Assembly: GCA_964234715.1 (NCBI GenBank)
Contig: OZ174281.1
Strand: one strand, 5' to 3'
DNA length: 64,000 nucleotides
DNA from: Podarcis melisellensis
Taxonomy: Eukaryota
This document shows positions 7,601-63,429 of this stretch, piece after piece. A program made the position numbers and the translations under genes. How positions within the stretch are numbered: position 1 is the stretch's first letter; every line of letters begins with the position of its first letter. Under the pieces are notes generated by a model, which did not search any database, had not been told where the DNA came from, and saw only the letters and a list, made by a program, of their open reading frames with translations.

Positions 7601-10600
7601 TGAAGGAATGGACACTTTTATTCGTGTTCTGCAAAAGCTAAACAGCATCCTTATTCAGCCCTGGAGACTCCATGTCAACATGGGGACTACCCTCCACAGA
7701 GTCACTACGATTTCCATGGCCCGGTGCACCCTCACCCTCTTGAAGACCATGTTGACCGAACTGCTGCGTGGAGGGTCCTTTGAGTTCAAAGATATGCGTA
7801 TTCCTTCCGCACTTATTTCTTTACACATGCTCCTGTGTTCTATTCCCCTCTCTGGACGTTTAGACAGTGATGAACAAAAAATCCAGAATGACATTGTCGA
7901 CATTTTGTTGACTTTTACCCAGGGGGTTAATGAGAAGCTAACCATCTCGGAGGAAACTCTGGCCAATAACACTTGGTCCCTCATGCTAAAAGAGGTCCTC
8001 ACTTCTGTTCTGAGAATTCCTGAAGGGTTTTTCTCTGGTCTTATACTGCTTTCTGAGTTGCTGCCTCTGCCGCTTCCCATGCAAACCACTCAGGTATGTA
8101 AAAACTATCAATTATTTGTAAAAGGCAAGAAAATTAAAAGACTGATGAAGAGGATGGGTAGGTAAGAACTGACTGATAAAGAGTTGTGCAGTGGATCTAT
8201 CCATTTGATGGATTGTATACCAACCTCCCTCAACCTGGTGACCTCCAGTGTCATTGGACTCCCATCAGCCCCAGCCAGCATAGTGAATGGTTAGGGATGA
8301 TGGGAATCATAGTCCAGCCACATGTGAAGAGATGCAGGCTCCCCATCTCTCATTTAAAGGGCTGATAGAGGGGATTCGTCCTTTTGATGCTGGATGCTGA
8401 GTGGGGATATTTCTCCTTAGCTGGGAGGCAATAACTCTATATATTGGAGCACATATATTGGCTACAAGGGTTTTTATGAGTGCCTAAAGAGCACCAGGTT
8501 AGTGTGCCTTGCATGTGGTGTTGGAGAAGAACTCTACGTTTTGGCACTCTCATAGAGTTAATTTTGCTTTTCTGACAGGTCATTGAACCGCATGACATAT
8601 CGGTGGCTCTCAACACTAGGAAACTGTGGAGCATGCATCTTCACGTTCAAGCGAAATTGCTGCAAGAAATAGTACGGTCCTTCTCTGGCTCCACCTGCCT
8701 GCCTATTCAGCACATGCTGAGACGCATTTGTGTTCAGTTGTGTGACTTGGCTTCGCCAACTGCTCTCCTTATTATGAGGACTGTTTTGGATCTGCTTGTA
8801 GAAGATTTGCAAAGGTACGTTTTTTATACTTTGTCCTAAGGGTCTTTAAGTAGCAGTGCTAACCTGGTGCCCTTCAGAAGTTTTGGTCTACGACTCTCAC
8901 CATAGCTGTGCAGATTAAGGATGATGGGAGTTTTGTTGAAGGCTTCTGTAGAACCTTTGCATGTTGAGGCTGGAAAATGGGCTATGCCTCTCCTATCTCA
9001 TTCATGAATAGGCAGTGGCTGCCTTGGATTTAGGCCTTCTGTTTCTCTCCATGCATGGTGATGGCTCTTGAAGGATGGAGCTGTGTGATGGCTCCTCCAG
9101 CTGGGAAATCCTGAGGGCTGCAGTAAATTGCTGCATGTATGGCATGAATATGACATGGAGAGGTGGGCTTCATACAGTTGGTGATAAGAGATGCCTCCAC
9201 ACATGGAGAGGGCTGAAACATAGCATTTCTTTTCAATACTTTGTTAGGCTTACTGACTTTGGATACCAAAGTCAAAACTGTAGTGGTTATCTCATCTTTG
9301 CTGGCAACTAGATACACAGTTAATTAATGACCACAACCTGAAAACAATCAAATTACAGTGGTAGCTCGGGTTAAGAGCTTAATTAGTTCCAGAGATCCAT
9401 TCTGAAATGGTTCTTAACCTGAGGCATGCTTTCGCTAATGGGGCCTCCACTTCCTGGTTAGCAACCACTTCCTGGTTAGCGGAGTTTGTAACGAAGTGTC
9501 TCTAACCTGAGGTACCACTGTAATGGTAATAAGCTCATTTGCAACAAATGCAGATAGATAGATAGATTTATATTACAGTGGTGCCCTGCAAGACGAAAAA
9601 CCCGCTAGACGAAAGGGTTTTCCATTTTGGAGGCGCTTCGCAAAACGAATTCCCCTATGGGGTTGCTTCGCAAGACGAAAAAAATCTTGCATCCCCCCAC
9701 GGGTTTTTTTCGCTTTTTTCGCCCTTTTCTTAAGCCGCTAAGCCGCTTATCAGCTGTTCCGCTGATAAGCCGCTTAACAGCTGATCGCTGGAAGCCGCTT
9801 GACAGCTGTAGCGCTAATCCGCTAAGCTGTCAATGGGCTTGCTTCGCAAGACGAAAAAACCGCTAGACGAAGAGAATCGTGGAACGAATTCTTTTCGTCT
9901 AGCGAGNNNNNNNNNNNNNNNNNNNNNNNNNNNNNNNNNNNNNNNNNNNNNNNNNNNNNNNNNNNNNNNNNNNNNNNNNNNNNNNNNNNNNNNNNNNNNN
10001 NNNNNNNNNNNNNNNNNNNNNNNNNNNNNNNNNNNNTTTAATGGAAATTTCAGATCAGAAGTTTGTTTTGTCATACATGCATGCAGTATATTTGTCTTTT
10101 CTAATAAGAGCATTGGTGTCACTTCAGCAACCCAGAAGACAAAGAGAAGCAATACACTGGCCAGACTACCCGCTTGCTTGCGTTACTCGATGCCCTGGCT
10201 TCACACAAAGCCTGTAAACTGGCTATTTTGCACTTGATTAATGGAACTGTGAAAGGGGATGAGAAGTATGCTGAAGTTTTCCCAGAGCTTTTGTCTTTAA
10301 TGCGAGCTGCAGGGGACAACATTATTCACCAGCAGTGTGCGGAGTTCTTGGCTTCTATTTTGCAGTCTCTCTGCGATCAGGTATTTAAAAATGAAAATCT
10401 AAAGAGCCCTCAATTTCATTCTGTATTGATTGTGCACATGCATGTGGGCAGTGGGGGTGGGGCTGCCCTGGAAGGAGCTCAAGGCTCCCCTTAGCAAACA
10501 AGTCAGGCTTGTCCAAGAAAATACGAAAAGGATGTCCCTACTCTCCATCTCCCCATAACAGCTAGCCAGCATGCCTTCAAGGAAGGAGAAAAATATACAT

Positions 10601-28214: not shown

Positions 28215-29540
28215 GGTTGGTGGATTGCATGAGCATTATTGTCTTGGAAGATGTTTAGTAGGGCCAATTCTGGGGTTGATTTCTAATACTTGCTATTTTA
28301 CGTATTTCTTGTATGGCTGTTGTCCAGAATAGTTGAATTCTGGGGCACTCCCACCACATATGGAGGTATGTGCCTGTGGAGGTGCATCCTCTCCAGCATT
28401 TTGGTGAGGTTCCTGGGTGTATTAGCGCTAGTTTTCTTGGTGTTAGGTACCACCTGTAGGTGAGTTTCAGAGTGAGTTCTTTTTGTTTATATGGATTTAA
28501 AGGGGGGAGGGGTTTAGACCACATTTTGGTCCATAAAGTGGGGTTAATATCATAGCCTATGTTATCCTCCCATTGTTTTTGATTGTGTCTAGGGGGTTCG
28601 TGGGATTTTGTAGTATTTTGTATATTGCGGATACCATCCTTTTACCGTGTCCCTTTGTTGTTAGGAGGAGGTTTTTGAAGGTTGTCAGGGGCCTAGTTGC
28701 TGCTGATTTTACTGCTGGGTTGTTTAAGAGGGCATGTAATTGGTGTTGTGCTAACCAGGGCATTTGGGTGTCTTCTAGTTTGTCCTGTATTTCTTGTGTT
28801 GACAAAGGTTTGTTATTTTTATAGAAGTCTATCAGGCGATATAAGGCTTAGGTTTTCCAGGTTTTTATCTAAAGGTTTTGTGCTGCATGGTGGAATAATG
28901 AGTGGTACGCCAGGGGAATTAGTGGGGATGGGGTTGGGGATAGTTTGCCTATTTCTGTTTTCCATACTTTGAGCATGGTCTGTGTGCACCTGTTAAGTGC
29001 TGTGGGAATTTTCCTTTGTTTGGGAGGAGTGGGTATGCTGTGGTGCAGGTATTTTCAATTGTGTCCCTCTCTAGGTGTATCCAGTGTTTTGTCGCATCTT
29101 CTGGTATATATGGGATTATATGGCATTTTTGGTTGGCAATGTAATATGCTTCTATGTTGGGGATTCCCCATCCTCCTTCTGAGGTGGGGAGGTGCAGGTA
29201 TTTGGGGCTTATTCTTGGTTTTTTATGTGAGAAGATAAAAGAGTGTAGTTTTCTCTGCCATCTGCAGAGTTGCGTTGGGGGAATCAAGATTCTGAGGGTT
29301 TGGAATAGGCAGGTTAGTTTTGGGAGCGTGATCATTTTGATCATGGCTATTTTGTCTGAGAGAGTGAAATTCATGTTGTTCCATCTCTTTAGATCTTTGT
29401 TAATTTGTCGCCACAAGGGCTTGTAGTTGTGGAGGTACAATTTATTGAGGTTTCTGGTTATTTGTACCCCTAGGTATCTGAACTTGGTGTGGCAGTTTTA
29501 TTTTGGTGACATTAGTGAGTTCTTTTTGGGTGTGAAGAGG
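28215..29540 (-). mobile_element. Degenerate L1/Tx1 LINE ORF2 3' fragment
   Basis: Frameshifted peptides KIAMIKMITLPKLTCLFQTL, EGGWGIPNIEAYYIA and zinc knuckle CWRGCTSTGTYLHMWWECP. Confidence 0.85.
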
Positions 29541-32860: not shown

Positions 32861-33215
32861 AAGGTAAAGGTACCCCTGCCCGTACGGGCCAGTCTTGACA
32901 GACTCTGGGGTTGTGCGCCCATCTCACTTAAGAGGCCAGGGGCCAGCGCTGTCCGGAGACACTTCCGGATCACGTGGCCAGCGTGACATCGCTGCTCTGG
33001 CGAGCCAGAGCCGCACACGGAAACACTGTTTACCTTACCGCCGGAGCGGTACCTATTTATCTACTTGCACCCGGAGGTGTTTTCGAACTGCTAGGTTGGC
33101 AGGCGCTGGGACCGAGCAGCGGGAGCGCACCCCGCCGCAGGGATTCGAACCGCCGACCTTTCGATCGGCAAGTCCTAGGCGCTGAGGCTTTAACCCACAG
33201 CGCCACCTGCGTCCC
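32861..33215 (-). mobile_element. Full-length Sauria SINE in RAD54B intron 1
   Basis: Minus strand starts GGGACGCAGGTGGCGCTGTGGG, has B-box GGTTCGAATCC and an (ACCTTT)2 tail; TSD TCTTCCTA. Confidence 0.9.
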
Positions 33216-33422
33216 TCTTCCTACCACCCACCTAATAAGGCTGGTACACCTGGAGGAGAAAGAAGAGGAACCATACTTCCTAGTTTTTTTGGGTATTTTC
33301 TCCCTGGTGTGAGAACAGCAATAGGATATGTTCTGGAAAGTATTTAAGAGTTTCTTTCTCTAGGGCTTGCTTTTTAAAGCAAACTTCTTTTTTTGCTGTT
33401 TTTCAGACGAACAGAACTGAAC

Positions 33423-36500: not shown

Positions 36501-39500
36501 TTATTTTATTTTCTCTCATTATATTTTTATATTGCCCTTCCTCAGGGGTCAGCAACCTTTTCCAGCCACGGGCCGGTCCATCATCGCTCAGACTATGTGG
36601 TGGGCCAGACTATATTTTGAAAAAAAATATGAACAAATTCTTATGCCCCACAAATAACCCAGAGATGCATTTTAAATAAAAGGACACATTCTACTCATGT
36701 AAAAACACGCTGATTCCCGGACTGTCTGTGGGCTGGATTGAGAAGGCGAATAGGCCGCATCCAGCCCCCAGGCCTTAGGTTGCCTACCCCTGCTCCAGAG
36801 AGCTCAGAGCTGAGGTCATGGTGCTCTACTTGAGCTATGAGTCAATAAAATTGCCAATGAATATAGGTATAAACATAATTAACAGGCAAATTGTGGGTGA
36901 ACCTTGCTTGAAGTTGCCCACGCCAAATAGCTAACTTTAAAAAAAAATGTTTATTGTTTGGCTTCCCTCATGCAATTATTAGGGCTAAAGTAGCAATTGG
37001 ATTAAATCTTCCCTCAATATCTTCTCAGACTTGATACAGGGTGTTGTTGTTTAGTCGTTTAGTCGTGTCCGACTCTTCGTGACCCCATGGACCAGAGCAC
37101 GCCATGCACTTCCACTGCCTCCCGCAGTTTGGTCAGACTCAAAGATTTCCAAATCCTAATTACAAATGTAATGATCTGTCCATTTTGGTTCTCTTAGGGT
37201 CCCCCCCCCCATCTTCAATTCAGTTCTCCACACTTCTGCGGCAATTTGCATTTTATAAATAAATCATGAAAGTTCCATGCTTATCCATATGAAATATTTC
37301 AGAATTTACACTTGGGCAAAATGTCCATTAGTTAACAAACTTCCAAGAAATCTTCATCAGGCTGGACGTAAAGCAAAATGGGGGGGGGGGGGGAATGGAG
37401 GGAATTTGGCTGATGCTGTCGTTGCCAGGCAGTCTGGATTTGGTCATTGTTTTAAGATGGAAGTGCAGGAGGAGGTGGCAAACTTAATTGGATTAGGCTA
37501 GGAGGTGCTATGCCGGTTTCAGGTTGCACCAAGGACAAAGAACCGCACAATGGCTGATCTCCTGTTTTTGAAAATGTAAAAGCCAGATGTCTCCCCAATC
37601 TGTCTCAAGTCTTAAGCAAAACACCCTTGTTAGATGGAGAACAGGAATAAAGATGCTTTAAGATAGGGATATTTTCATTTGTTAGATGTGTGTCTCTTTC
37701 AGTTTCCTTGGCTTTAAATATTGCCTTGGGCAGGAAAGAATTCTGAATGGCTGTCTTACAGGATGTCATACTTTATCCTCACAACAACCTGGTGAAGGGA
37801 GGAGGCCAGGCCAAGATGTGGTGCTTTGATGCTAGAAAGTGACCTTCATGGAGTGGGTTTTCCAAGTCCAAATCCAACAGTCTCTCCTACTTCCTTTTAC
37901 AGTACTATATATTTTCTGAGAGAAAAAAATACTGTGTGTGAATACCTGTGTGATTTGGGCAAACAATAGTTAAAAATTGATGTTTTCCATTTGTGCAATG
38001 GTTGGGTTTCTTAACATAATAATAGCTTTTTGGTGGAAGTTATGAAAAGCCCACACAGTACAATGAATCCAGAACCCTGATTGAATGTTGTGTTTATTAC
38101 TTGACTCCCGAGAGCTATTTTTTAGCCACAACCCTGCTGAATGGTGACCATGGATGCTGTGAGATGGGTAGATTACGGAACGGCACAGCTGCAAGGGGTG
38201 GCAGAATATGAAAAGAACTTGATGTTAACGTTCCCCCCCCCCCCAGCTCTTTTGTTCATGGCACTCCTTCTTTTGAGCGACTGCCTCTTTAAAAAGTGTG
38301 TGCGTGCGTGGGAAGCCGAGGCAAGCTGCAAAGTGCTGGGGAAGCTTAGCTTTACTGTGAAGCCTGAGCCTGAGTGAAACCTAACTAGCTAGGCGATATG
38401 CAATTCCTGATTGACAGCAGGACTAGCATTATGCAAATACTGCCAGAGAGAACAGCAGCTAGGGAGCCGTGATCAGGGGCTCTGTTAGGGATCTCTCTAC
38501 ACACGCCCGCTCCTAAATCCCCCTGTTTGTTGTTTTCATTTCTCCTTTTGCTGTGGTGGTTCGGCTTAACAATCAATAAATGACCAAAAAAAAAAGTTGT
38601 TGCTTTCTTGGGCATGAATAAATCCAATCCTCTGTGCAGTTTCAGTTTCTTGTCAGCTCAAAGAGATGTGCGTGAGCTTGTTAACTCAGGATGAATTGGG
38701 TAATATTTAGCAGGGTAATGTGCTAATCTTTAAACCTTTTATGTTTTCAATCCGGTGTATGTATGGGTCTCTTGACACAAAAGTGTGTGTTTTGCCTGCT
38801 TCTCCTCGTCTCCTTCAATCTGAAGCCTTATGTAGGTCAGGCTTGGCTTAAGCAGATTTCCTGAACCTGCGTCAGCTTAAGCTGAAGGAATTTTAATAAA
38901 CCCTCCCTTGTAGGCGTGGGCCTAAATGAGACAAGCCTAGTTAAGCCTGATCTTTTTCTGTTTGTGAAAAAGAGCCGAGCAGAGCTAGGATCTGCGTGGT
39001 GGTTTCAGGAACTGCTTCTTCAAGCTGGAGAGAACGATGGTTGGGAAGGCCAGGTCCTCGAATTTTACCTTGTCTGAAAAGCTCGATTTGCTGAAACTTG
39101 TCAAGCCGTATGTTAAGATTCTCGAAGAGCACACCAACAAGCACTCGGTCATAGTGGAGAAAAACAAATGCTGGGACATCATAGCCGATAACTACAATGC
39201 CATTGGAGCTGACCGCCCTCCTCGCACCGCGCAGGGCCTGCGCACCTTGTACAAGAGGCTCAAGGAATATGCCAAGCAGGAGCTACTGCAGCAAAAAGAG
39301 AGCCTTTCTGATTATAAAAGCTACATCTCTGAACCGACCAAGAAAGTTGTGGAGATGATCCCCCAGATTTCCAGCGTGTGCTTGAGGGAGAGGAGCAATC
39401 TGCCATGGTAAGTTGACTTTTACATTGCGCCTGGATGGCCGCTATAGCGCCTCCTGTCTTCTCTGGCCATCCCCTTTTGAGCTACATGCCTTAGCCTTTG

Positions 39501-51500: not shown

Positions 51501-54500
51501 ACTTTTCCCCTTTTCTTTTGAAGTTATGGGAATTTCAAATTTAGTGTGGAAGTTTCAATTTTTTTTTTTTAAAAAAAGAAAGGCATATAGCCCATCTAAA
51601 AGCACGAAGAAAGGGGAAAGACTGACAGCTGAGCTAGCACTCACAGCTGTCATTTCATTTGCCTCCCTGGGCTCAGCCTGAGGGACGTGTTACAAGCGCT
51701 CTCCCTATCTTTCCCCTTGTTTGTGTGTCTTCGCCTCTACAGGTCCAGCGTGCCCAGTGACAACAGCAACAGTGAGGCACCAGGAGGAGCCTGGCTGCCT
51801 CACAAAATACTTCAGCGTAGTGTGGTGCAAGGCCTCCAAGAAAAAACACAAGAAGTGGGAAGGTGATGCCATTCTTATTGTGAGAGGGAAGTCGGTGATC
51901 CTGAAAGATACAGAAGGCAGAGACATTGGAAGAGGTAATGCCAAATTAGAGTGCAACTCTGATGTGTAGAAGTTCAGCACTGCCCCCAAAGGAATGTGTG
52001 CTTGAATAAAATGAAAACAGTTGTTTGTATGGTCGGCATTACAATGGAGTAGGAAATTTGGCAGTGGCGCAGTCTTTGTCGGTGATTGGCTGAACTGTTC
52101 TTGTGTCACAGAGAAGTAGGAAAGCCAGAATTGTCTCTGGCTGCTTGCTATTGGTTATGGGCTCAGATCCAAGAGAGAAGGGCCAGGCAGGTGCAGGGGC
52201 TTTGGAAACAAAGAGTGAAAGAGGCAGAGGGGCCTGAGAAGGAAGTAGGTCAGAAGGAACAGAGGGACTTAGGGTATGAGTACTGGTGCTTGAGAAAGAT
52301 CTGGAGGAACGTGGGGAAAGACAAGGAGGAGTCTGAGAAGAGAACTGGGAGAAAGAAGACGGTAGTTAGGAAAAGATGCATGTGACCAGGAGCTTCAGAG
52401 GCAGAGACCTGCCTCTGATTTGAAATAAGCAGCCAAATCTCAGGCTGAAGGCCCCTTAAGGCTCATATTTAATGCACCCCACCATTTTGGTTTTTTTTTT
52501 TTACTCTAACTGATAAATCCAACAAATTATTTGCTTTGTTCTGATGGTTCAAAAGTCTAGTAATACTTCACACCCCTTAATTCAGGGGTTCTCAAACAGA
52601 CATGCATGGAGCTGGTTGGGGGAATGCTCTGGATAAGCATGAGAAGGAGGCTGCAGGGCTTTAGAGGAATCGATGAGAATTGCCTTCTCCTTCCCTTCGT
52701 CCAGCAAGGAGTCTCCATTGGATCTTGGAGCCTTTCCGTTCATGGACAGAGCACTCTGGATCCAACCTAATGTGGCCAAAGTCTTCGTCTAACTTTTACC
52801 TGACAGCTTTATCATGACTATTATTTTAATTTTCTGTTCATCTCAGCTAAACATTTTGCGGCCTGCCTTAGGTGCTGGATACAAAGTCAAAGACCTGGAG
52901 AATTTTGACCAAGGCCAGACTCTGATGGTTGGAGGCAAAGAAATTGAAGTGATGGGCATAATTGCAGAAGAGGACTTCAAAAGCGGCAAGTGTTTTCAGT
53001 CTGGTGTGAAGACTGCCGAGGAGATTTGGAACGTCTCGCAAGCTGCTGCAAAACCATTCTGCAACCCTTTCAAAAATGTATCCAAAACTAACACTGACGG
53101 AAATCCTCCCAAAGGCTCCCAGAACTATAACCCACGTCATGATCCATGCGCACCAAGTGAGGATTTTTATGGTTCACCTGCTTTAATCTGTTTTTAACCT
53201 CTGTATTATCCTCTTCTGAATTTGAATAGACTGGCAGGATTAGGCCCTGGTTTTTTTGGCCTCCTCTGCTCCAATATATTGGGGTGAATATTTTTTTAAA
53301 TAAATTTCGAATCTACATGAGGAGATGTGCAGGGGTTGCTAGTAGCAGGCAATAATACATTTAAATGGACAATCTGCAACTAATGCCCCCCCCATCAGAT
53401 TAATTTGGAGAGGATGCTTTCTTTTCTGCAGCAGCCTAACCTTTCCCAGCCAGGGGCCCTCCAATTGTTTCTTCTTATTGTTATAAGAAAAAACTGCTCC
53501 TTTTCCCTTGTGGGGTACCCAGGAGCCCATATAGAGTCCTTTTGTAGGTTCTCTATTGGTAGGAGAAAATAACAGAGGCCAACCAGAGAATCTTGAGGAG
53601 CAAAGCAGCTAGTAAGCCTGATCTTTATTACCGTATTTTTCGCACCATAGGGCGCACCGGACCATAGGGCGCACCCAGTTTTTTGGGGGGGAAATAAAGG
53701 GGAAAAAATTATTTCCCCCCAGGTGCGGGGCTGGGGTGGGGGAAGCTAGAGCTTCCCCGACCCCAGCCCTCAAACAGGCAGCTCTCCGCAAGCAGCGGGA
53801 ACGCTCCCGCTGCTTGCGGAGAGGTCCGCGAAGCCTGGACGCGCTGAGCTCAGCGCGCCCAGGCTTCGGCATGCAGGCACCTCTCCGCAAGCAGTGGGAA
53901 CGCTCCCGCTGCTTGCGGAGAGGTCCGCGAAGCCTGGACGCGCTGAGCTCAGCGCGCCCAGGCTTCGGCATGCAGGCACCTCTCCGCAAGCAGCGGGAAC
54001 GCTCCCGCTGCTTGCGGAGAGGTCCGCGAAGCCTGGACGCGCTGAGCTCAGCGCGCCCAGGCTTCGGCATGCAGGCACCTCTCCGCAAGCAGCGGGAACG
54101 CTCCCGCTGCTTGCGGAGAGGTCCGCGAAGCCTGGACGCGCTGAGCTCAGCGCGCCCAGGCTTCGGCATGCAGGCAGCTCTCCGCAAGCAGCGGGAACGC
54201 TCCCGCTGCTTGCGGAGAGGTCCGCGAAGCCTGGACGCGCTGAGCTCAGCGCGCCCAGGCTTCGGCATGCAGGCACCTCTCCGCAAGCAGCGGGAACGCT
54301 CCCGCTGCTTGCGGAGAGGTCCACGAAGCCTGGACGCGCTGAGCTCAGTGCGCCCAGGCTTCGGCATGCAGGCACCTCTCCGCAAGCAGCGGGAGCCCAG
54401 CGCTGGGCTCCCACTGCTTGCGGAGAGGTGTGCGAAGCCTGGAGAGCATGAGGGGTTGGTGCGCACCGACCCCTCTCACTCTCCAGGCTTCAGCGAAAGC

Positions 54501-57500
54501 CTGCATTCGCACCATCGGACGCACACACATTTCCCCTTCATTTTTGGAGGGGAAAAAGTGCGTCCTATGGTGCGAAAAATACGGTAACTGTTGCAACAGG
54601 GTCTCACTGTCACATGCAAGAGACAGGAGGGACTCCAAACCATGCGCTCAAGCCCTTATATAGACTTTTGAACTGCCCACCCTGGAGCCCAAAACCACCC
54701 CTCCATACATCATACATACATCAGAGAAGGGGCAGACTACAACAGAAGCCTGAGTGCATTGTTTTTATCCTGTCTGCCAGGTTACCTGATTGGATTACCT
54801 GGGCATCCTGACCACTCTTTTGTTATGATAGCTACTCAATTCCTGAATCCAGGTCACAGGCTCACCCTATTCATTTCTTAAATGTGCCCTTGAGACAGGA
54901 TTTGTGAGCATAGAGACAATGGGGAGGCTCCCCATTTCCTTCGACCTTGCAGAGAAATATTTGAGGTCGTTTGGGAGAGACAAAATGATTTCAGGACTTT
55001 TTTCTGTGGGGTTTCAGATATGTGCTTGCTTGGTACATTTATGAACATTTATTATATATATGACTTTAACATTCTTATAACATTATAATTCACATCAGCG
55101 CTAACTGTTGGGCTTGCTGGCTGGTGCTGATGGGAGTTGGAGTCCAACAGCAGCTGGTGGGTACCAGGTTGGGGAAGGCAGCAGTGGCTAGTCAAATATT
55201 CCTTCATACCTTGAGGGCATATCCACACCATGCATTTAAATCAAAACAAGAGTAAAATCTATTTAGGTAACATTGACAATCATTTGCTGTTCTGCTGCTT
55301 TACTTAATCTGATAATTAAAAACATAACTGTGTTTGCCAGCTGTCGATTCTCCCCCAACCAGTAGCTTTTACTGAATAAACAGTAATGTTGCTTTCATGA
55401 TTCCTGTGCTTCAAATTTAAGATTGCTTAGTTATGCTGCGCCCATCCCCAAATCACCAGCGGTTGTTCAACAAGTTGGGCTTGCCTGTGGTGGATGTTGT
55501 TGTGGACCCCCACATTGTAAACCATCTTCGACCGCACCAACGGGAAGGGATCACATTTCTTTATGAATGTATGATGGGAATGAGGTAAGAGGATAATCAT
55601 TTTGTACTTCTTTTTAAATTGCGTGAACAAAAGCTGAAGTATGCCTTTCAGTCATCTGCAGTAAATCACACAGGTGGGCAAACTTTCTTTCTGCTTTCTG
55701 ATTTCATCGGTCTTTTTAGAACCTTGGCATGGGGTGGGGGGCAGGCTGGTATCTCTGAAGCTTATTGAGAATTGGCCTATATGTCATGGGTATGCTGTAG
55801 TGGTAGGAAATGGCATAGCCCTGGTGGTTAATTCAGTTGAATTGCATTTGGACCAGCTACAGCAGGAGGTTTCTATTAATGAATAATGCAACCGATTCTC
55901 TCCTAGCAAATTCCACCCTCAGAGAAGCAGGGCACTCATTCGAGATACACTTGACACGTTACACATTAACAGGGAAGTTAGTGAGAAAGCTCATTGTTGA
56001 AATTGCTATGCCATTTGCTTAATATAAACTCTAATTTGAAGTAGGGATTTTAAACTTCAATCCTATACCCACTTACCTGAGTGTAAGCCTCATTGGACTT
56101 CTGAATAACAACAAAGGAGAAGACCACAATGAAAGGAGAAAGTTGGGATATTGATTCCTGTTCATTCAGTAAAACTGTTCCAATCTCATTCCCTTATCAG
56201 AGTAAGTTGAGAAAGCTTTTGCCAAAGTTAGGAGCTTTCTACAAATTTGATTCAGGTTGTATAAGAAAACAGCCTCAGAAACTTAGAAGGAGATGTATTC
56301 TAAGCAAAAATACTAGATTAAGCTAATAAACATAAATGTTATTTTGTTATTCATTTTTGTAGCATTTTCTGTATATTAATGTTTTTACCCTTGTGGGGTT
56401 TTTACCCTTTCTGGTTTTGCACTAAATTGAATTATTTGATATGCACCTTGTAACAACATTGTCATATTATTGAAGGTGTGTGACTGAACCAACACATACA
56501 AATAGTAAGTAAATGAAATAAAAATCTAAGGCCAGGCCTCAATACATATTTTTGTGAAAAAGAACAAAGGACTTGCATAGCTTAACAATATGGATTTTCC
56601 TAAGAATGGTTTGCAGAGAATTGCCAAGCTTTAAAAGAAGAAGAATAAAGTATCAACCATGCAATTGTCTTTTTTCAGAGTAAGTTGTAGATTTGGAGCC
56701 ATTCTTGCAGATGAAATGGGTTTAGGAAAAACTCTGCAGTGCATTTCAGTCCTCTGGACTCTCCTGCGTCAAGGGCCATATGGATGCAAACCTGTAATAA
56801 AACAGGCACTGATAGTCACTCCTGGGAGTCTGGTGAAGAACTGGGGGAAAGAATTTCAAAAATGGCTGGGAAGTGAGAGAATCAAGGTGTTCTTAGTGGA
56901 TCAGGTGAGATAATAGTCCTGTTTGTACATCATGTTAAACCATTCTTAAACCACTGTTAATTGAAAAATGCCAAAGAACGTTCTGCAGATAGAATCCTAG
57001 AGCTGGAAGGGACCCTGCGGACCATCTAGTCCAACCCCCTGCAATGCAGGAATATGCAGCTGTCCCTTGTGGGGATTGAACCTGCAACCTTGGCATTATC
57101 AGCACCACGCTTTAACTGTTTTGTCATACACTATCTTCTTTCCACGCGGCCTACTTCTCGCCCTGAGCTGCCCCTCTTCCTGACTTCCCTTAAGGCTTTG
57201 CAGTGCCCAGCTGCTAGCATTGCCTCATCATGTCACCATTTCCCTTTCCATTGGTCAGCTCCAAGAGCGAGGGTGTGGGAATCTTAGCAGTCTTTAGCAA
57301 CTTTAATCAACCTGCAGTGTTCTCTTTACATTCTCCCAATAAAGAAATGCCCATACTCCTTTGCAACATGTGTTTTTTAGAAATCCTTTTCTTCCACTCC
57401 TCTGGTCTACCCAATTGTAATTGACCCATTACCATAAATTTGAGCTCAGTAAACTTGCCGATCAGAAGGTCGGGGGTTCGAATCCCCATGACGGGGTGAG

Positions 57501-60500
57501 CTCCCGTTGCTCGGTCCCTGCTCCTGCCAACCTAGCAGTTCGAAAGCACCCCCGGGTGCAAGTACATAAATAGGTACCGCTCCGGCGGGAAGGTAAACGG
57601 CGTTTCCGTGCTCTGCTCTGGTTCGCCAGAAGCGGCTTAGTCATGCTGGCTACGTGACCTGGAAGTTGTACGCCTGCTCCCTCAGCCAATAAAGCAAGAT
57701 GAGCACCGCAACCCCAGAGTCGGCCACGACTGGACCTAATGGTCAGGGATCCCTTTACCTTTACCTTTAAACCTTACCTGTGTTGGAGCCATCCCCCATC
57801 TCCCCTCCCCATCTGCTCCTGGATGGTTAAAAGACTGCTTTCAATAATGCACACTTAAGTATTTTCATCTGTTTCATTTGTAATCATCAACAGGAATAGA
57901 ACCTTTCTTGAATTCCTCCCACTTACTTGGCATTCTCTCTTCTATTTCTGTGCTTTGCTATTCAGGCATAAAGTTGCTGCTACTGTGAGCTGTACCTACT
58001 TGGATAAAGTAGGTATAGCTCAAAGCGATATGTCAAAGAAATTCCCTTTAAGTTTTCAACTCCAGCTTGAGCTGCAGCTGTGAATTGCAGTGGGGCAGGG
58101 ATGGGGGTGGGGAAAGGCAGAGTTGGATGGGGAAAAGGATCCTGTTATTAGTCAGAGTTAGCAGCAACGTGAACTTCAGGAAATTTTCTAGTGAGAGTTG
58201 CTGAATGCTAAGATTGGCTTCTCTTGCTTAAAGTTGCAGTAACCTGGTGGGCAATTTGGGCAGGGCAGCAAAACAAACACACATAAACCATCGTTAGGGA
58301 GGTACTTACATTCACATGTAATACTAAGCCATAGTTAAGGTCAGTAAAGCAACAACAAACCATGGTTTGTTTTCACAAACATGGCATAGTTAAGGCATTT
58401 TGCTGGGTTAGTATGTAACGCTAAGCCATGGCTTATTAACTAAGATTTCTTTAAACCATTGTTTAACATGATGTGCGAACCAGGAACAATGTTCACCTGT
58501 CACCTGTAACAATGCTAGGTACTTTCCTTGGTGTTTGGATAGACCTTAGTTCTATTTTTACTGTTGCGGAGCCTGTTAGCTGGTTTGAGAATGTTTACAC
58601 TGCGCCTTGTTAGCATTTGTATTCCTATTGTAAAAAACAGTTGAAAAATCATTTTGAGTGTTGCTTTTTGCTGCTTCCCCATGTGGGGACAATAAAATCT
58701 AGATGTAACTTTACAACTCTACATTGACATGCTGTGTGGTGTTGTCAATGGAGCCACCCAAGGACTTGCAACACAACTGAGTAGAAGCACCTCAGCATTT
58801 GTGAATANNNNNNNNNNNNNNNNNNNNNNNNNNNNNNNNNNNNNNNNNNNNNNNNNNNNNNNNNNNNNNNNNNNNNNNNNNNNNNNNNNNNNNNNNNNNN
58901 NNNNNNNNNNNNNNNNNNNNNNNNNNNNNNNNNNNNNNNNNNNNNNNNNNNNNNNNNNNNNNNNNNNNNNNNNNNNNNNNNNNNNNNNNNNNNNNNNNNN
59001 NNNNNNNNNNNNNNNNNNNNNNNNNNNNNNNNNNNNNNNTGCCAGGAGGAGGATAGCATTTCCTGTTATGGGCCTACCGTGATCTGTCATTCCACCTTTC
59101 TCCTCTGCTGTTAAAACAAATGTAACAATTGATACGAAAAAGGGCAAAAACCCCCAGAACACTAGGGTGCCTCCCCCTCACCAGAGCCATTATTCTCCTT
59201 TGCAATTAACAGAAGGTGCAACATTTTCTGATTGGAGAGTGTGCATGTGAATTAGGATGTTTATATGCACATGCATGCATAAGAAGCCCACATCATGGTC
59301 AGTGTGAGAAACAAGATGCTGGGCTTGACAAACCACTGCCCTCATCTAGCAGGGCTTCCCACACGAAAGCAATAGCCCTCTCTCGCTCTTCTTCCCCAGT
59401 GGCTGGTGTTCAGGGGCATGGTGCCTGTCATCCAACAGGTAGTGTACAGCCATCATGACTATTGGCCACGGATAGCTTTCTCCCGTGTGAATTGGAGTAA
59501 TCACCTTTGAGAACCATCTAAACTAGCAACTATGCCCATGTCTTATGGCAGTGACATACACAGATTAACTAACCACTGTGTGAGGAAGTAAACACACAGG
59601 CGTTTTTGTTTCTTTAAACTGCCAACTTGCCTGACCCACAAAGCATTATAATTCTCTCTACGATCTGCAGGATCACAAAGTAGAAGAGTTCATCAATTCC
59701 CCACTTTATTCAGTCCTGATCATTAGTTATGAGATGTTTCTACGCTCCCTGGACCAAATACAGAAGGCGCAGTTTGGCCTTGTCATTTGCGATGAGGGAC
59801 ATCGCTTGAAAAATGCTGCTATTAAGACGACGACTGCACTTGCCAGTCTGTCTTGTGAGAGGAGAATTATTCTGACTGGTGAGTACTTAATCATCCTGTT
59901 GCCACCAAACGGACTAGCACGGGGATAAAATAAGTGTTTGTCACATTTATGAATGTAGCTGGAGAGGGAACACTTCTTAGGATACTACATGAAGAGTTAT
60001 TTGTGTCCAAGCAAGATGTTGAGATCAGACCCCGGTAGCTGGAAGCACTGTTTGCCATACAGTAAAAAAGATAAATTTACATTGTAATGCTAAAGATGAA
60101 TAAAACGTAATCAGCTCGGGGGGGGGGGCAGCCCTTCTGAAGGTGTAAATGCATTCCTTTTCTCTTCCAAGGTACTCCAGTACAAAATGATCTGCAAGAA
60201 TTTTATGCATTAATAGAGTATGTAAATCCTGGAATACTTGGTCCTTTGTCTACATACAAAAAAGTATATGAGGAACCTATTCTCAGATCCCGAGAGCCTT
60301 CAGCAACAAAGGTACATTATCATCAAAATCTGGAATTGAACAGCGTGATTTAAAATTAAGGGGCACCCGGTGCTGCTTGACAATATGAGGAATGAACCGT
60401 TCTTCTGGATGAGATTGTACAGAAAGGCATTACAGTACTTAACTTTACCCTTGCAGTGTTACATGTGTTCATACTTCTAAAAGCTGAGTAGGATTTTCAG

Positions 60501-62082
60501 AATTTATTGTACAACACAAACGGCTCCATTTGGTCTTAGCTCCCTATAGTGGCTTCCATTGCTGAATACTATTGAAAACTGGCAAAATGCTCATAACTTT
60601 TGCTGAGTGGGGTGTGCACAGAGCACATCAGTATACAGAGGCACAGCATATTTGGCATGATGAGTGGGAAGGGGCCATAACCTAGAAGCAGAGCCCATGT
60701 TTTGCATGCAGAAGGTCTCTAGTTCAAAAGGGGTTGGAAAAGATCCTTGCCTGAAATCCTAGAGAGCCAGTCCCCATAAACGATACAGTAGTAGCTGGAC
60801 TAATGGTCCCATCTGTTACAAAGGAACTTCATATGCTCATAATATGCTCATATTTTGAGGATCCCTACTGGTATTGGATGAGTCACCCAGTATCAGGGGT
60901 GGGTGGCAAGTTTGGGGTTCATTGCAACAGTTGTCCTCAGGCACAGTACTTTACTCTTCCCTATAGGAGTGAAATGACAACTATTAACTTACGCAGGAGA
61001 AAGTTAAGGGGTGTATGTTAACAGTGGCTAAGTCTGCTTCTTCCTCATGGAAACCCTATTGTCTTAACTCTGCTCCAGATTGCATTTCTTAGCCAAGGTA
61101 GAGTGGTATGCGAACTTGAGAACTGGATTTATCATTCCCTCTATTTCTGAAATTCAGGTGTGGGTGCCATTGCTTTGTGTAGCCAAGATGTCACCACCCA
61201 CCCACTGTAGGGGGATGTATCAGAACTGCACATGTTCTGTACTGACTGACTGGGGAGGGGGTGGATGGAATGGAGTATCCTGGAGGGGGACGTGTCTGCC
61301 TGACTCAAAGAGGAACACTCCTCAATACAACATTGCAGGTCTCTAGATCTATAAAGGTACCCCTGCCCGTACGGGCCAGTCGTGTCCAACACTAGGGTTG
61401 TGCGCCCATCTCACTTAAGAGGCCGGGGGCCAGCACTGTCCGGAGACACCTCCGGGTCACGTGGCCAGCGTGACAAAGCTGCTTTGGCGAGCCGGCACCA
61501 GCGCAGCACACGGAAACGCCGTTTACCTTCCCGCTATAAAGCGGTACCTATTTATCTACTTGCACTTAGGGGTGCTTTCGAACTGCTAGGTGGGCAGGAG
61601 CTGGGACCGAAAGACGGGAGCTCACCCCGCCGCTGGGATTCGAACCTCCGACCATGCGATTGGCAAGCCCTAGGCGCTGAGGTTTTACCCACAGTGCCAC
61701 CCACGTCCCTTCACTCTATATCTATAGACCATTACTATTAAGCTGAGATTGTTTGTATGAGCCAGATTGACTGTCCTTTTCATTTACTTAGGAAGAAATT
61801 GAACTGGGAGAGAGAAGAGCAGCAGAACTGACTCGCCTCACTGGACTCTTCATTCTGAGAAGAACCCAAGATGTCATAAACAAATTCCTCCCTCCTAAAT
61901 TGGAGAGCATACTTTTCTGCCGCCCAACAGCACTGCAGCTCGATCTCTATCGAAGTCTGCTGAGCTCTCCGTTTGTTAGATCTTGCCTTCAGGGTAGTCT
62001 GGAAAACAGCTCCCATTTAATATGCATTGGAGCTCTGAAAAAGCTTTGCAACCACCCCTGCCTTCTCTTCAAAGCAATAAAG
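33423..62082 (+). CDS. RAD54B: RAD54B SNF2-family DNA repair/recombination translocase, coding exons 2-10 (gene continues past the window)
   Basis: Exons 33423-33545, 34947-35118, 51743-51934, 52872-53156, 55422-55584, 56679-56904, 59671-59878, 60172-60311, 61792-62082, phase-consistent. [10 protein letters not shown]-terminus; [19 protein letters not shown] (Walker A), CDEGHRLKN (DExH), [18 protein letters not shown]. Confidence 0.97.
34947..35118 (+). CDS. RAD54B: RAD54B exon 3
   Basis: tgtag|GTACAT...ATAG|gtaaga; open frame, phase 0 to 1 bridges exons 2 and 4. Confidence 0.8.
36543..36792. mobile_element. hAT-like MITE (same family as 11258-11507)
   Basis: TIRs CAGGGGTCAGCAA / TTGCCTACCCCTG; shared core ATGCCCCACAAATAACCCAGAGATGCATTT. 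Confidence 0.78.
37042..37140 (-). mobile_element. BovB/RTE extreme 3' fragment
   Basis: Reverse complement resembles 28060-28156, including the (CAA)n tail. Confidence 0.85.
39037..39407 (+). CDS. FSBP: FSBP exon 1 (coding part)
   Basis: ATG at 39037; donor CCATG|gtaagt. Confidence 0.95.
39037..46521 (+). CDS. FSBP: Fibrinogen silencer-binding protein (Myb/SANT-like DNA-binding domain plus coiled coil), 299 aa, nested in RAD54B intron 3
   Basis: Exons 39037-39407 and 45993-46521 total 900 nt; [36 protein letters not shown]... and ...[22 protein letters not shown]. Confidence 0.95.
41680..42160 (+). mobile_element. Degenerate L2 LINE RT 3' fragment
   Basis: [12 protein letters not shown]...[24 protein letters not shown]. 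Confidence 0.7.
43430..43670 (+). mobile_element. CR1 LINE 3' fragment; further CR1 3' ends at ~44900-45055 and ~63240-63315
   Basis: CR1-like end: ...ATACTTCTTCACACAGTGCATAATTAAACTATGGAAT... Confidence 0.6.
45993..46521 (+). CDS. FSBP: FSBP exon 2 (coding part)
   Basis: ttttag|TGCTACA; stop TGA ending 46521. Confidence 0.93.
46881..46886 (+). terminator. Candidate FSBP polyadenylation signal AATAAA
   Basis: AATAAA 360 nt after the stop codon, with T-rich sequence downstream. Confidence 0.55.
51743..51934 (+). CDS. RAD54B: RAD54B exon 4
   Basis: [29 protein letters not shown]...GRDIGRG. Confidence 0.93.
52872..53156 (+). CDS. RAD54B: RAD54B exon 5
   Basis: [27 protein letters not shown]...PRHDPCAP|gtgagg. 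Confidence 0.92.
53631..54584. mobile_element. Non-autonomous Tc2/pogo-type DNA transposon containing a palindromic minisatellite
   Basis: TA TSDs at 53629-53630 and 54585-54586; 27-bp TIR CCGTATTTTTCGCACCATAGG(G/A)CGCAC with 1 mismatch. Confidence 0.9.
53782..54428. repeat. 99-bp GC-rich tandem repeat, 6 full copies plus a variant 7th; each unit is two palindromes
   Basis: CTCTCCGCAAG recurs at 53782, 53881, 53980, 54079, 54178, 54277 and 54376. Confidence 0.97.
55422..55584 (+). CDS. RAD54B: RAD54B exon 6
   Basis: [13 protein letters not shown]...[30 protein letters not shown]. Confidence 0.94.
56679..56904 (+). CDS. RAD54B: RAD54B exon 7 (Walker A)
   Basis: [16 protein letters not shown]...[10 protein letters not shown]...VDQ|gtgaga. 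Confidence 0.95.
56990..57118 (-). mobile_element. Short tRNA-derived SINE with CR1-like 3' tail
   Basis: Similar to 18177-18316. Confidence 0.65.
57453..57768 (+). mobile_element. Sauria SINE, slightly 5'-truncated
   Basis: B-box GGTTCGAATCCC, shared core, CCTTTACCTTTACCTTT tail. Confidence 0.88.
59671..59878 (+). CDS. RAD54B: RAD54B exon 8 (DExH)
   Basis: [22 protein letters not shown]...CDEGHRLKN...RRIILT. Confidence 0.95.
60172..60311 (+). CDS. RAD54B: RAD54B exon 9
   Basis: [24 protein letters not shown]...EPSATK. Confidence 0.95.
61353..61709 (-). mobile_element. Full-length Sauria SINE
   Basis: Highly similar to 32861-33215; imperfect TSD CTCTA(G/T)ATCTATA. Confidence 0.9.
61792..62082 (+). 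CDS. RAD54B: RAD54B exon 10
   Basis: [26 protein letters not shown]...[16 protein letters not shown]|gtttgt. Confidence 0.95.
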
Positions 62083-63429
62083 GTTTGTATATTGTGCTTT
62101 GTTTAAACACATTGTTTACAAAGCATCTCACATTATCGGTGCCAAGAAAAACACAGTGGACAGCATTTCAGTCAACATAAAGACCACATAAGCATATCAA
62201 TAAATTCACAAATTACAGTAATTCAAAACGTGTTTATCACAAAAATACAGTGAAACTATTCCCAATTATATTAATTCACCTAAAAAACCTGATTCAGCAA
62301 CATGATAATCTGGGAGTAGGAGCAAACCTTGAAAGTTGTGAATAACTATGGTGCTTGCAGAGTCAACAGATCTGAGTGGGCAGTGAGAGGAAGAAACAAA
62401 TTACATGCATACATTGTGTGGCAGGCACATCTCTTATTTCGGGCAGTTCACCTCCCAGCTTTTATCTGAGCTTCCCTTGTAGCCCCACCCCCATCTCTCA
62501 CCTGGGGTTCAGATCATTACTCCCTCTAACACAGCCCTAATGCCCTTTGATGTTTACCCTTTGGGAGTGACCTGCCCATGGCAGCTTTGGGAAAGATGCT
62601 TCCCTCCCAGATACTGCTGCAGATATATGCCCCCCCCCTCGGTTTCTACTTTCTCACCTGGGCACATGGAACAGCTCTAGAGGGTTGTTAATATCAGCAG
62701 CGGCAGCTGCAGCTGCAGTTGAAGGCATTGGAGGCAAGGATCAAATTCTTTTCCAGCCCTTCAGATGTTCTGGCTGCTGTTACAGGACAAATGAATTTTC
62801 TTTCTCTCCCTTTCCCTTTGCCTCAAGGCTGCCCTGTTTGTTACTTACTACAGCAGTGCCAGCTGCTGCTGCTGCTGCTGCTGCTACCAGCAGATCAGCA
62901 AAAATCCCTTGAGAAATTATGTACTTCAGAAAGTAGCCGCACCTTTTGATTTCTTCAAAAACCTCAAGCCTGGAAAGTGTGAAAATGAAATGCTAACCTT
63001 TATCAGTTCCATTTCTTACAGTCTTTATTCTCTTAGCTGGCTTCTGCACTCATTATTAATTGGGCTTTTCTTATCCCGTCTCCCCAACTCCCTCTCAAAC
63101 TAGTTAATAAAAGATGTCAAGAGATGCCAGCGTATTTTATCTTGTCCTTTTAGAAAGCAATGCCTATTGCTTCTGTTGTATTATATTGCCAGTAGCAGCC
63201 ATGATTCCTTCAGGGCAATCTTTTAAAAATGTATGATCTCCTTGAGGTTCCTGCATTCCAGGGGGTTGGACTAGATGACCCTCGAGGTCCCTTCCAAATC
63301 CCTACAAATCTATGATGCTACCTTTATGGAATCTTTTCCATGCTGATTTTCCTGCCAAGGACCTGCCAAGCATCCCCTGCCTAAGATGCTTCTTTATTTG
63401 CTTGGAAATACATTATATTTATCTATATT

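What the first reader, a model, noticed from the sequence alone, without database searches (positions are those of the whole stretch)
53631..54584. Tc2/pogo-type MITE carrying a 99-bp tandem array built from two alternating near-perfect palindromes
Seen in sequence: between 27-bp TIRs with TA TSDs lie six or more 99-bp units. Each unit contains hairpin A, CCTCTCCGCAAGCAGCGGGA-ACGC-TCCCGCTGCTTGCGGAGAGG (20-bp stem), and hairpin B, CGAAGCCTGGACGCGCTGAG|CTCAGCGCGCCCAGGCTTCG (20-bp arms, 1 mismatch, no loop), joined by short linkers. About 85% of the array can fold, giving roughly 13 consecutive cruciforms in DNA or dsRNA stems in RAD54B pre-mRNA. Established: CCGTA termini with TA TSDs are characteristic of Tc2-like pogo elements. 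Inference: this is a mobile vehicle that disperses a CpG-dense, hairpin-forming satellite. It could seed a lizard satellite family, form a fragile site, or act as an ADAR/Dicer substrate.
Basis: partly seen in the sequence, partly recalled or inferred. Interest (0 to 1): 0.8.

Follow-up and report, generated by a model that had tools for sequence, protein, structure and literature searches.

The report
Lizard MITE carrying double-hairpin repeat array
A small non-coding "jumping gene" in an intron of a lizard DNA-repair gene carries six tandem copies of a 99-base unit made of two hairpin-forming palindromes; this is a lizard example of a known kind of element, but the same repeat also rides in a second, unrelated transposon shell in a related lizard.

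Summary
Window 53631-54584 is a 954-bp non-coding element with 27-bp terminal inverted repeats (26/27) and TA on both sides. It holds 6.3 copies of a 99-bp unit at 98% identity. Each unit is two palindromes.

It lies in a + strand intron of an SNF2-family gene that looks like RAD54B.

The best reading is a tandem-repeat-containing MITE of the Tc1/mariner-pogo superfamily, the kind already described as miDNA4 and Xstir in Xenopus and DTC84 in a clam.

New here: translated array ORFs led to Podarcis lilfordi loci on two chromosomes. There a homologous 99-bp array (9.2 and 10.2 copies, about 88% identical) sits inside a different TA-flanked element with CAGTGG-type inverted repeats. So the array is a dispersed, mobile module shared by two transposon shells.

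The arms of hairpin A change together across arrays. Replication template switching explains this without any function.

The Tc2 label is plausible but unproven. The ideas about fragile sites, ADAR or Dicer, and seeding of a satellite are untested.

First-stage notes of this scan list similar elements on other pieces of the same genome, including a "99-bp x10" copy. I could not read those.

This is a new member of a known kind, of moderate interest.

The parts
53629..53630 (.). Left copy of the TA target-site duplication
   Evidence: Read directly; identical TA at 54585-54586
53631..53657 (+). Left terminal inverted repeat, 27 bp, starting CCGTAT
   Evidence: 26/27 match to the reverse complement of 54558-54584; 0 matches in 100 shuffles
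53661..53674 (+). Second, direct copy of the 14-nt subterminal motif also contained in the inverted repeat (candidate transposase binding site)
   Evidence: Four copies of the motif in the window, all inside the element; 0 of 100 shuffles reach four; family D3
53686..53720 (.). Weak G/A/T-rich hairpin (H1)
   Evidence: -11.9 kcal/mol, z = -1.7, not significant alone
53728..53769 (.). GC-rich hairpin H2, unique to this element
   Evidence: -23.8 kcal/mol, z = -6.5
53775..54394 (.). Tandem array, 6.26 units of 99 bp, each unit = hairpin A + hairpin B + 17 nt of linkers
   Evidence: TRF. Five differences from consensus: three CpG transitions and one shared C>G in units 1 and 5. CpG observed/expected 0.93
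54376..54427 (.). Variant hairpin A' (52 nt): same outer arms as A, with a longer inner palindrome
   Evidence: Alignment; fold -29.1 kcal/mol, z = -9.2
54432..54494 (.). Variant hairpin B': same outer 10-11 bp stem as B, different interior
   Evidence: -27.0 kcal/mol, z = -7.4
54506..54524 (+). Internal copy of the inverted-repeat core, in left-end orientation; with the right inverted repeat it forms an 80-nt terminal hairpin
   Evidence: fold of 54505-54584 is -29.4 kcal/mol, z = -10.5
54558..54584 (-). Right terminal inverted repeat
54585..54586 (.). Right copy of the TA target-site duplication
52793..53194 (+). Open frame containing the upstream exon of the host gene (RAD54B-like)
   Evidence: Stop-to-stop ORF. 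Pfam found no family in this ORF, so the exon call and the RAD54B likeness rest on my reading and memory of the peptide
55421..55585 (+). Open frame containing the downstream exon of the host gene
   Evidence: Stop-to-stop ORF; no Pfam family in this ORF. The next + strand exons at 56635-56910, 59635-59925 and 61792-62103 hit the Pfam SNF2-related domain (E 8e-19 to 1e-10)

Best explanation
A non-autonomous cut-and-paste DNA transposon of the Tc1/mariner-pogo superfamily inserted at a TA in an intron of the RAD54B-like gene. It is MITE-like: its core is about 430 bp if one unit is counted.

Its interior is a chain of GC-rich palindromes. One two-palindrome module of 99 bp has been tandemly amplified to 6.3 copies. 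The likely route is replication slippage or unequal exchange, possibly started at the short CAGGCA repeat that borders the unit. This happened recently.

The module is not private to this copy. It is a dispersed lacertid repeat that travels inside TA-inserting elements, changes copy number (6 to 10), and has moved between two shells with unrelated inverted repeats. DNA-repair template switching is the likely route, and the CCGTA-type element is the likelier birthplace because it keeps diverged paralogues (A', B') next to the array.

The palindromes stay symmetric because one arm can template the other during replication (quasi-palindrome template switching), combined with homogenisation within arrays. 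No host function is needed.

Shown: the anatomy, the youth of the array, the dispersal in P. lilfordi, and the paired arm changes.

Inferred: the amplification mechanism, the direction of transfer, neutrality, and the superfamily subgroup.
For: - Ends: 26/27 inverted repeat and TA on both sides. The 14-nt subterminal motif occurs four times.
- No coding capacity: Pfam gives only sub-threshold or no-stretch hits on the stop-free array frames. Rfam gives only generic hairpin hits far below gathering scores.
- Youth: units are 98-100% identical, three of five substitutions are CpG transitions, and CpG observed/expected is 0.93 against 0.2 in the flanks.
- In-situ paralogues A' and B'.
- Dispersal: array-frame translations hit three 'hypothetical predicted proteins' of Podarcis lilfordi, on contigs of three different lengths, which I take to be three chromosomes. 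DNA of two of them was read. L004 has 9.2 units and L005 has 10.2 units. Each array lies inside a TA-flanked element with a 22-bp CAGTGG-type inverted repeat. The two elements are 96.6% identical and their flanks are unrelated.
- An array-less member of that second family is in this window at 9576.
- Paired arm changes in hairpin A: two pairs differ on both sides, with an A.C intermediate in L004. The chance of two or more such pairs among 10 random substitutions is 0.0044.
- Precedents: miDNA4, Xstir and DTC84; template switching creates and maintains hairpins (PMC8794818).
Against: - Only one CCGTA-type copy could be read. Whether that family carries the array as a rule rests on an unread scan note.
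- A Podarcis muralis gene model preserves the left 93 bp of such an element but continues with a different interior.
- No transposase partner was found, so the superfamily call rests on the TA duplication and the form of the inverted repeats.
- One of the two compensatory pairs (alignment columns 27-34) may instead reflect different symmetric deletions from an A'-like ancestor.
- Hairpin B gains uncompensated mismatches in both lineages.
- The high CpG content persists at 3.4% divergence between the lilfordi copies. This could hint at something other than neutrality, such as protection from methylation or GC-biased conversion.
Confidence: 0.78

Rival explanations
1. Locus-specific expansion. 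An ordinary MITE with a single A+B module inserted here, and the array grew afterwards at this locus only. This copy would then disperse nothing, and the arrays in P. lilfordi would be independent expansions of a shared single module.
For: - No second CCGTA-type copy is in the window.
- Units 1 and 5 share a variant, as expected from in-place block duplication.
- Copy number differs between every array seen: 6.3, 9.2 and 10.2.
- In miDNA4 most copies hold one monomer (PMC12054243).
Against: - L004 and L005 share the same right-hand array junction and are independent insertions, so in that shell the array was present before transposition.
- A scan note reports a 1382-letter copy with 'x10' 99-bp units. 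Its length fits 334 bp of unique sequence plus 10.6 units (unverified).
Confidence: 0.14
2. Functional element. The array would be kept palindromic and CpG-rich by selection. Candidate roles are an intronic orphan CpG island or regulatory element, a hairpin source of small RNAs, or a structure needed for transposition or amplification of the MITE.
For: - Paired arm changes in hairpin A.
- CpG observed/expected of 0.93-1.15 in all three arrays, although the two lilfordi elements are 3.4% diverged.
- Very stable RNA and DNA folds.
Against: - Template switching gives the same covariation without selection (PMC8794818).
- Hairpin B decays.
- Units carry 1-nt indels.
- There is no Rfam family match.
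- The insertion sites are unrelated.
- No expression or methylation data are available.
Confidence: 0.06
3. Assembly artefact. The array, or its copy number, would be produced by mis-assembly of a repeat.
For: Near-identical 99-bp units are hard to assemble. There are N runs elsewhere in the window.
Against: - Five unit-specific substitutions.
- Clean unique junctions on both sides.
- Homologous arrays of similar size in an independent assembly of another species.
Confidence: 0.02

Closest known systems
miDNA4-Xt, a Tc1/mariner MITE of Xenopus tropicalis with an internal satellite motif (Scalvenzi and Pollet 2014, as described in PMC12628747, PMC9659126 and PMC12054243)
   Same: A vertebrate Tc1/mariner-type MITE with a tandem-repeat motif between the inverted repeats. 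The monomer number varies between copies, and the element is proposed to seed satellite arrays.
   Different: miDNA4 is AT-rich (63% AT) and 300-600 bp long, and most copies hold one monomer. Here the unit is 70% GC, rich in CpG and made of two near-perfect palindromes. The same unit also occurs in a second shell with unrelated inverted repeats.
Xstir/Xmix MITE and tandem repeats in Xenopus (Hikosaka and Kawahara 2004, via PMC12628747)
   Same: [quoted passage not shown] The repeats derive from the MITE interior, and stem-loop formation is invoked in the mechanism.
   Different: The superfamily and the unit differ. Stand-alone arrays have not been shown here.
DTC84 and pearl-type tandem-repeat-containing MITEs of bivalves (PMC3879986)
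   Same: A composite MITE with a central region of up to several tandem monomers that are related to a satellite.
   Different: The host is an invertebrate and the ends differ. The monomers are not double palindromes.
Anolis carolinensis TcMar-N4_AC and TcMar-N6_AC non-autonomous elements (PMC3014272)
   Same: TA duplication, 23-25-bp inverted repeats beginning CYGTAT/CCGTAT, a squamate host, and no known autonomous partner. The authors linked N4 to a Tc2-related frog element.
   Different: Only the first 6 nt and a few later positions of the inverted repeat agree (about 11 of 20). No internal array was reported.
Tetris and foldback elements of Drosophila (PMC4079207)
   Same: A DNA transposon whose tandem repeats gave rise to a satellite.
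   Different: In foldback elements the repeats build the long inverted ends. Here the array is central and direct, and the ends are short and unique.

Membership tests
Tc1/mariner-pogo superfamily, non-autonomous (MITE-like) element | TA target-site duplication | tested here: met
   TA at 53629-30 and 54585-86. Three-bp and 4-bp alternatives do not match.
Tc1/mariner-pogo superfamily, non-autonomous (MITE-like) element | Terminal inverted repeats | tested here: met
   27 bp, 26/27.
Tc1/mariner-pogo superfamily, non-autonomous (MITE-like) element | No transposase gene; small size | tested here: met
   No real Pfam domain in any open frame. The element is 954 bp, of which 620 bp is array.
Tc1/mariner-pogo superfamily, non-autonomous (MITE-like) element | Multiple dispersed copies with unrelated flanks | tested here: inconclusive
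   There is one copy in the window. The left 93 bp recur at 25/31 aa in a P. muralis gene model. Hits of the inverted repeat in bacterial and metagenome collections were chance matches.
Tc1/mariner-pogo superfamily, non-autonomous (MITE-like) element | Ends shared with an autonomous DDE/DDD transposase-encoding partner | not testable with these tools
   No squamate genome or Dfam/Repbase search is available.
TcMar-Tc2 subgroup | Sequence similarity of the inverted repeat to Tc2-group elements | tested here: inconclusive
   Only the CCGTAT start is shared with Anolis TcMar-N4/N6, one of which was linked to a Tc2-related frog element.
Tandem-repeat-containing MITEs (miDNA4, Xstir, DTC84) | Array of tandem monomers between the inverted repeats | tested here: met
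Tandem-repeat-containing MITEs (miDNA4, Xstir, DTC84) | Monomer number varies among transposed copies | tested here: inconclusive
   Met for the CAGTGG-type carriers in P. lilfordi: 9.2 against 10.2 units at independent sites. For the CCGTA-type there is only an unread scan note.
Tandem-repeat-containing MITEs (miDNA4, Xstir, DTC84) | Same monomer also forms stand-alone satellite arrays | not testable with these tools
   This needs a whole-genome search.
Foldback elements (FB, Tetris) | Long inverted ends built of tandem repeats | tested here: not met
   The array is central and direct. The ends are 27 bp and unique.
Known structured RNA or miRNA families (Rfam) | Score at or above the family's gathering threshold | tested here: not met
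   The best hit is MIR1437 at 85.6 bits against a threshold of 168. All hits are generic hairpin matches.

The most novel reading that the evidence does not exclude
The 99-bp double-palindrome array could be a self-contained, CpG-island-like mobile module of lacertid lizards. It would hop between unrelated TA-inserting transposon shells and be kept palindromic and CpG-rich by selection rather than by mutation bias. Candidate reasons are that its hairpins serve MITE amplification or produce small RNAs. It would then be scattering orphan CpG islands or cruciform sites through genes and seeding satellites.
Probability: 0.1. Interest if true: 0.65.

Novelty: new member of a known kind. Interest (0 to 1): 0.42.

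Why it matters
- It adds a squamate, GC-rich example to the short list of vertebrate MITEs that carry and spread tandem repeats.
- One repeat module occurs in two transposon shells. That bears on how satellites are born and dispersed.
- The arrays give a clean natural example of palindrome arms changing together. This is relevant to the debate on template switching versus selection for hairpins.
- Practical point: the 99-bp period (33 codons) keeps four frames open. These arrays have been annotated as "hypothetical proteins" in Podarcis lilfordi and should be masked.
- Each copy plants about 0.6-1 kb of CpG-island-like, cruciform-prone DNA inside genes. Here the gene is a DNA-repair gene, which is testable for effects on methylation, replication and splicing.

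Tried and rejected
- Exact scans for the 21-nt inverted-repeat core: none in viral contigs. The single metagenome hit and two bacterial-genome hits (L001-L003) lie inside a small bacterial ORF and are chance matches.
- Literature search for the inverted-repeat string returned only unrelated C. elegans primers.
- Rfam at a permissive threshold gave only sub-threshold generic miRNA-hairpin matches.
- Pfam on the four stop-free array frames gave CUE and UMP1 hits with no passing stretch, which I reject as noise. A coding reading is also rejected because P. lilfordi units carry 1-nt indels (97-100 bp) that break the frames.
- The bacterial promoter and terminator scan is irrelevant and found nothing.
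- DNA for the third P. lilfordi locus (P0001) was withheld.
- The search of earlier findings by sequence was blank, and only titles were available for related notes.
- A 3-bp (Harbinger-type) or TTAA (piggyBac or Kolobok-type) duplication does not fit the flanks.
- The large HMMER protein search was not run. The claim does not rest on absence of relatives.
Full report
**1. What is there**

The element runs from 53631 to 54584 (954 bp). Its first 27 bases and the reverse complement of its last 27 agree at 26 positions, and TA lies directly outside both ends. The 21-nt core of the inverted repeat occurs only at these two places in the 64-kb window and never in shuffles.

A 14-nt motif inside the inverted repeat occurs four times, all within the element. 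Two copies are direct at the left end (53644, 53661). Two are inverted at the right end (54511 on +, 54558-71 on -). No shuffle reaches four. These are candidate transposase binding sites. The right end can fold as an 80-nt hairpin.

Tandem Repeats Finder gives 53775-54394, period 99, 6.3 copies, 98% matches and no indels. Each unit holds two palindromes. Hairpin A has 19-21 bp arms and a 4-nt loop, at -26.4 kcal/mol. Hairpin B is 20+20 nt with one A.C mismatch, at -21.3 kcal/mol.

After 26 nt, the seventh unit turns into two variant palindromes. A' has the same outer arms as A and a longer inner palindrome. B' has the same outer stem as B and a different core. With hairpin H2 (53728-53769) and the right-end hairpin, nearly the whole element is a chain of stem-loops. 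As DNA it folds at -497.7 kcal/mol, z = -70. The array plus variants folds as RNA at -659.6 kcal/mol, z = -37.

**2. Age and composition**

The six full units differ from their consensus at five positions. Three are CpG transitions. The other two are one C>G variant shared by units 1 and 5.

The array is 70% GC with CpG observed/expected 0.93. The 2-kb flanks have 0.19-0.23 and the window as a whole 0.32. The array is therefore young, or shielded from CpG decay.

**3. Context**

Stop-to-stop frames on the + strand show exons of one gene. Those at 56635-56910, 59635-59925 and 61792-62103 hit the Pfam SNF2-related domain. Pfam found no family in the two frames that flank the element, 52793-53194 and 55421-55585. 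I read them as the two nearest exons from their peptides.

From memory, the N-terminal peptide at 33378 and the exon peptides match RAD54B, which the first-stage notes also name. The element therefore lies in an intron, and its + strand would be transcribed. The four long open frames across the array exist only because 99 is 33 codons and the unit has few stops. They have no real family match.

**4. Relatives elsewhere**

DNA pattern scans of the available collections gave only chance bacterial hits.

Translating the stop-free array frames and searching the protein collection worked. Three "hypothetical predicted proteins" of Podarcis lilfordi have a 33-residue period. They lie on contigs of three different lengths, which I take to be three chromosomes.

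DNA was obtainable for two of them:
- L004 (OX395135.1) has a 99-bp array of 9.2 copies at 4932-5839.
- L005 (OX395142.1) has 10.2 copies at 4953-5957.

Units are about 88% identical to those of the window and about 96% identical between the two lilfordi arrays. Neither locus has the CCGTA-type inverted repeat.

Each array instead lies inside a TA-flanked element whose 22-bp inverted repeat begins CAGTGGTGCC. These are L004:4615-6320 (1706 bp) and L005:4816-6422 (1607 bp). The two elements are 96.6% identical, share the same right-hand array junction, and have unrelated flanks. An array-bearing element has therefore transposed with its cargo.

In L004 the array is bracketed by a 20-bp direct repeat (4914-4933 and 5841-5860, 19/20), and the array begins and ends inside truncated palindromes. 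This looks like a secondary acquisition.

An array-less short member of this CAGTGG family is present in the window itself at 9576. It runs into an N stretch, which I did not fill.

A Podarcis muralis gene model (P0004, otherwise retrotransposon-derived) preserves the left 93 bp of the CCGTA-type element at 25/31 residues. It continues with a different interior.

Outside the 99-bp unit, the CCGTA-type element shares nothing with the CAGTGG-type elements.

**5. Palindrome evolution**

I aligned 17 distinct units from the three arrays (A3) and scored them against the two-hairpin structure. 93% of cells pair, against 28-45% when partners are slid.

Hairpin A has two pairs that differ on both sides:
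- Columns 18-43 are A-T in the window, A.C in L004 and G-C in L005. This is an intermediate followed by its correction.
- Columns 27-34 are G-C in the window and C-G in lilfordi.

With 10 substitutions placed at random on the unit, two or more compensatory pairs arise in 0.44% of trials.

There are caveats:
- The events are few, and the units are related by concerted evolution.
- The second pair can also be read as two different symmetric deletions from an A'-like longer palindrome. That would still be an arm-symmetric change.
- Hairpin B only gains lineage-specific mismatches.

Replication template switching between the arms of quasi-palindromes produces exactly such one-step "compensatory" changes and can create and maintain hairpins (PMC8794818). 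Selection is therefore not required.

**6. Comparison with what is known**

MITEs that contain tandem repeats and may seed satellites are established. Examples are miDNA4 (a Tc1/mariner MITE of Xenopus tropicalis with one to many monomers), Xstir/Xmix, DTC84 and pearl in bivalves, and Tetris in Drosophila.

For the subgroup, Anolis non-autonomous TcMar-N4/N6 elements have TA duplications and inverted repeats beginning CYGTAT/CCGTAT. The authors linked N4 to a Tc2-related frog element. The match is only six leading bases plus scattered positions, and no autonomous partner could be sought.

I found no paper describing such an element in lizards. Dfam and Repbase could not be consulted.

**7. Verdict**

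The element is best filed as a new lizard member of the tandem-repeat-containing MITEs. It has three features worth noting:
- The unit is a pair of near-perfect, CpG-rich palindromes.
- The same unit rides in two shells with unrelated inverted repeats.
- The arms of one palindrome change together.

The functional suggestions (fragile site, ADAR or Dicer substrate, regulatory CpG island) remain untested.

First-stage notes of this scan list look-alike elements on other pieces of the same genome, among them s1-489316, "99-bp x10 array of double hairpins", 1382 letters. That length equals 334 bp of unique sequence plus 10.6 units. I could not read those sequences and treat the notes as leads only.

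Noticed in passing
window 9576-9906 (+), running into the N stretch 9907-10036: A short TA-flanked MITE with a CAGTGGTGCC-type inverted repeat and no 99-bp array. Its ends are 91-94% identical to the array-bearing elements of Podarcis lilfordi (L004, L005). The right part is hidden by N and was not filled. Just upstream (about 9510-9521) is what looks like the right end of another CAGT-type element.
   Followed up: partly
L004:4914-4933 and L004:5841-5860: A 20-bp direct repeat (19/20) brackets the 9.2-unit array inside the P. lilfordi carrier. The left copy and about 190 bp are deleted in L005. This suggests the array entered that shell by a repair or template-switch event.
   Followed up: partly
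L004:5001-5747, L005:5001-5471 and L005:5474-5890: The P. lilfordi annotation calls 'hypothetical predicted proteins' on these non-coding arrays on both strands (P0001-P0003). These are annotation artefacts of a stop-poor 33-codon period.
   Followed up: yes
window 38989-39408 (+): A 140-aa open frame with a strong Myb/SANT-like DNA-binding domain (PF13873, E 2e-20) inside an early intron of the RAD54B-like gene. From memory this recalls FSBP, which is nested in the human RAD54B locus. It could also be the Myb-like ORF of a Harbinger-type transposon.
   Followed up: no
window 32868-33182 (+), 57465-57773 (-), 61355-61738 (+): Three copies of one interspersed repeat, seen as near-identical pseudo-peptides in the ORF list. 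It is probably a SINE-like family.
   Followed up: no
L004 and L005 arrays versus window array (alignment A3 columns 18 and 43): Both lilfordi-specific changes in hairpin A create new CpGs, and array CpG observed/expected is 1.1-1.15. The arrays appear to gain rather than lose CpG. This may reflect GC-biased conversion or a lack of germline methylation.
   Followed up: no
window 28258-29497 (-): Long open frames that resemble the C-terminal region of a non-LTR retrotransposon ORF2 (judged by eye from the peptides).
   Followed up: no
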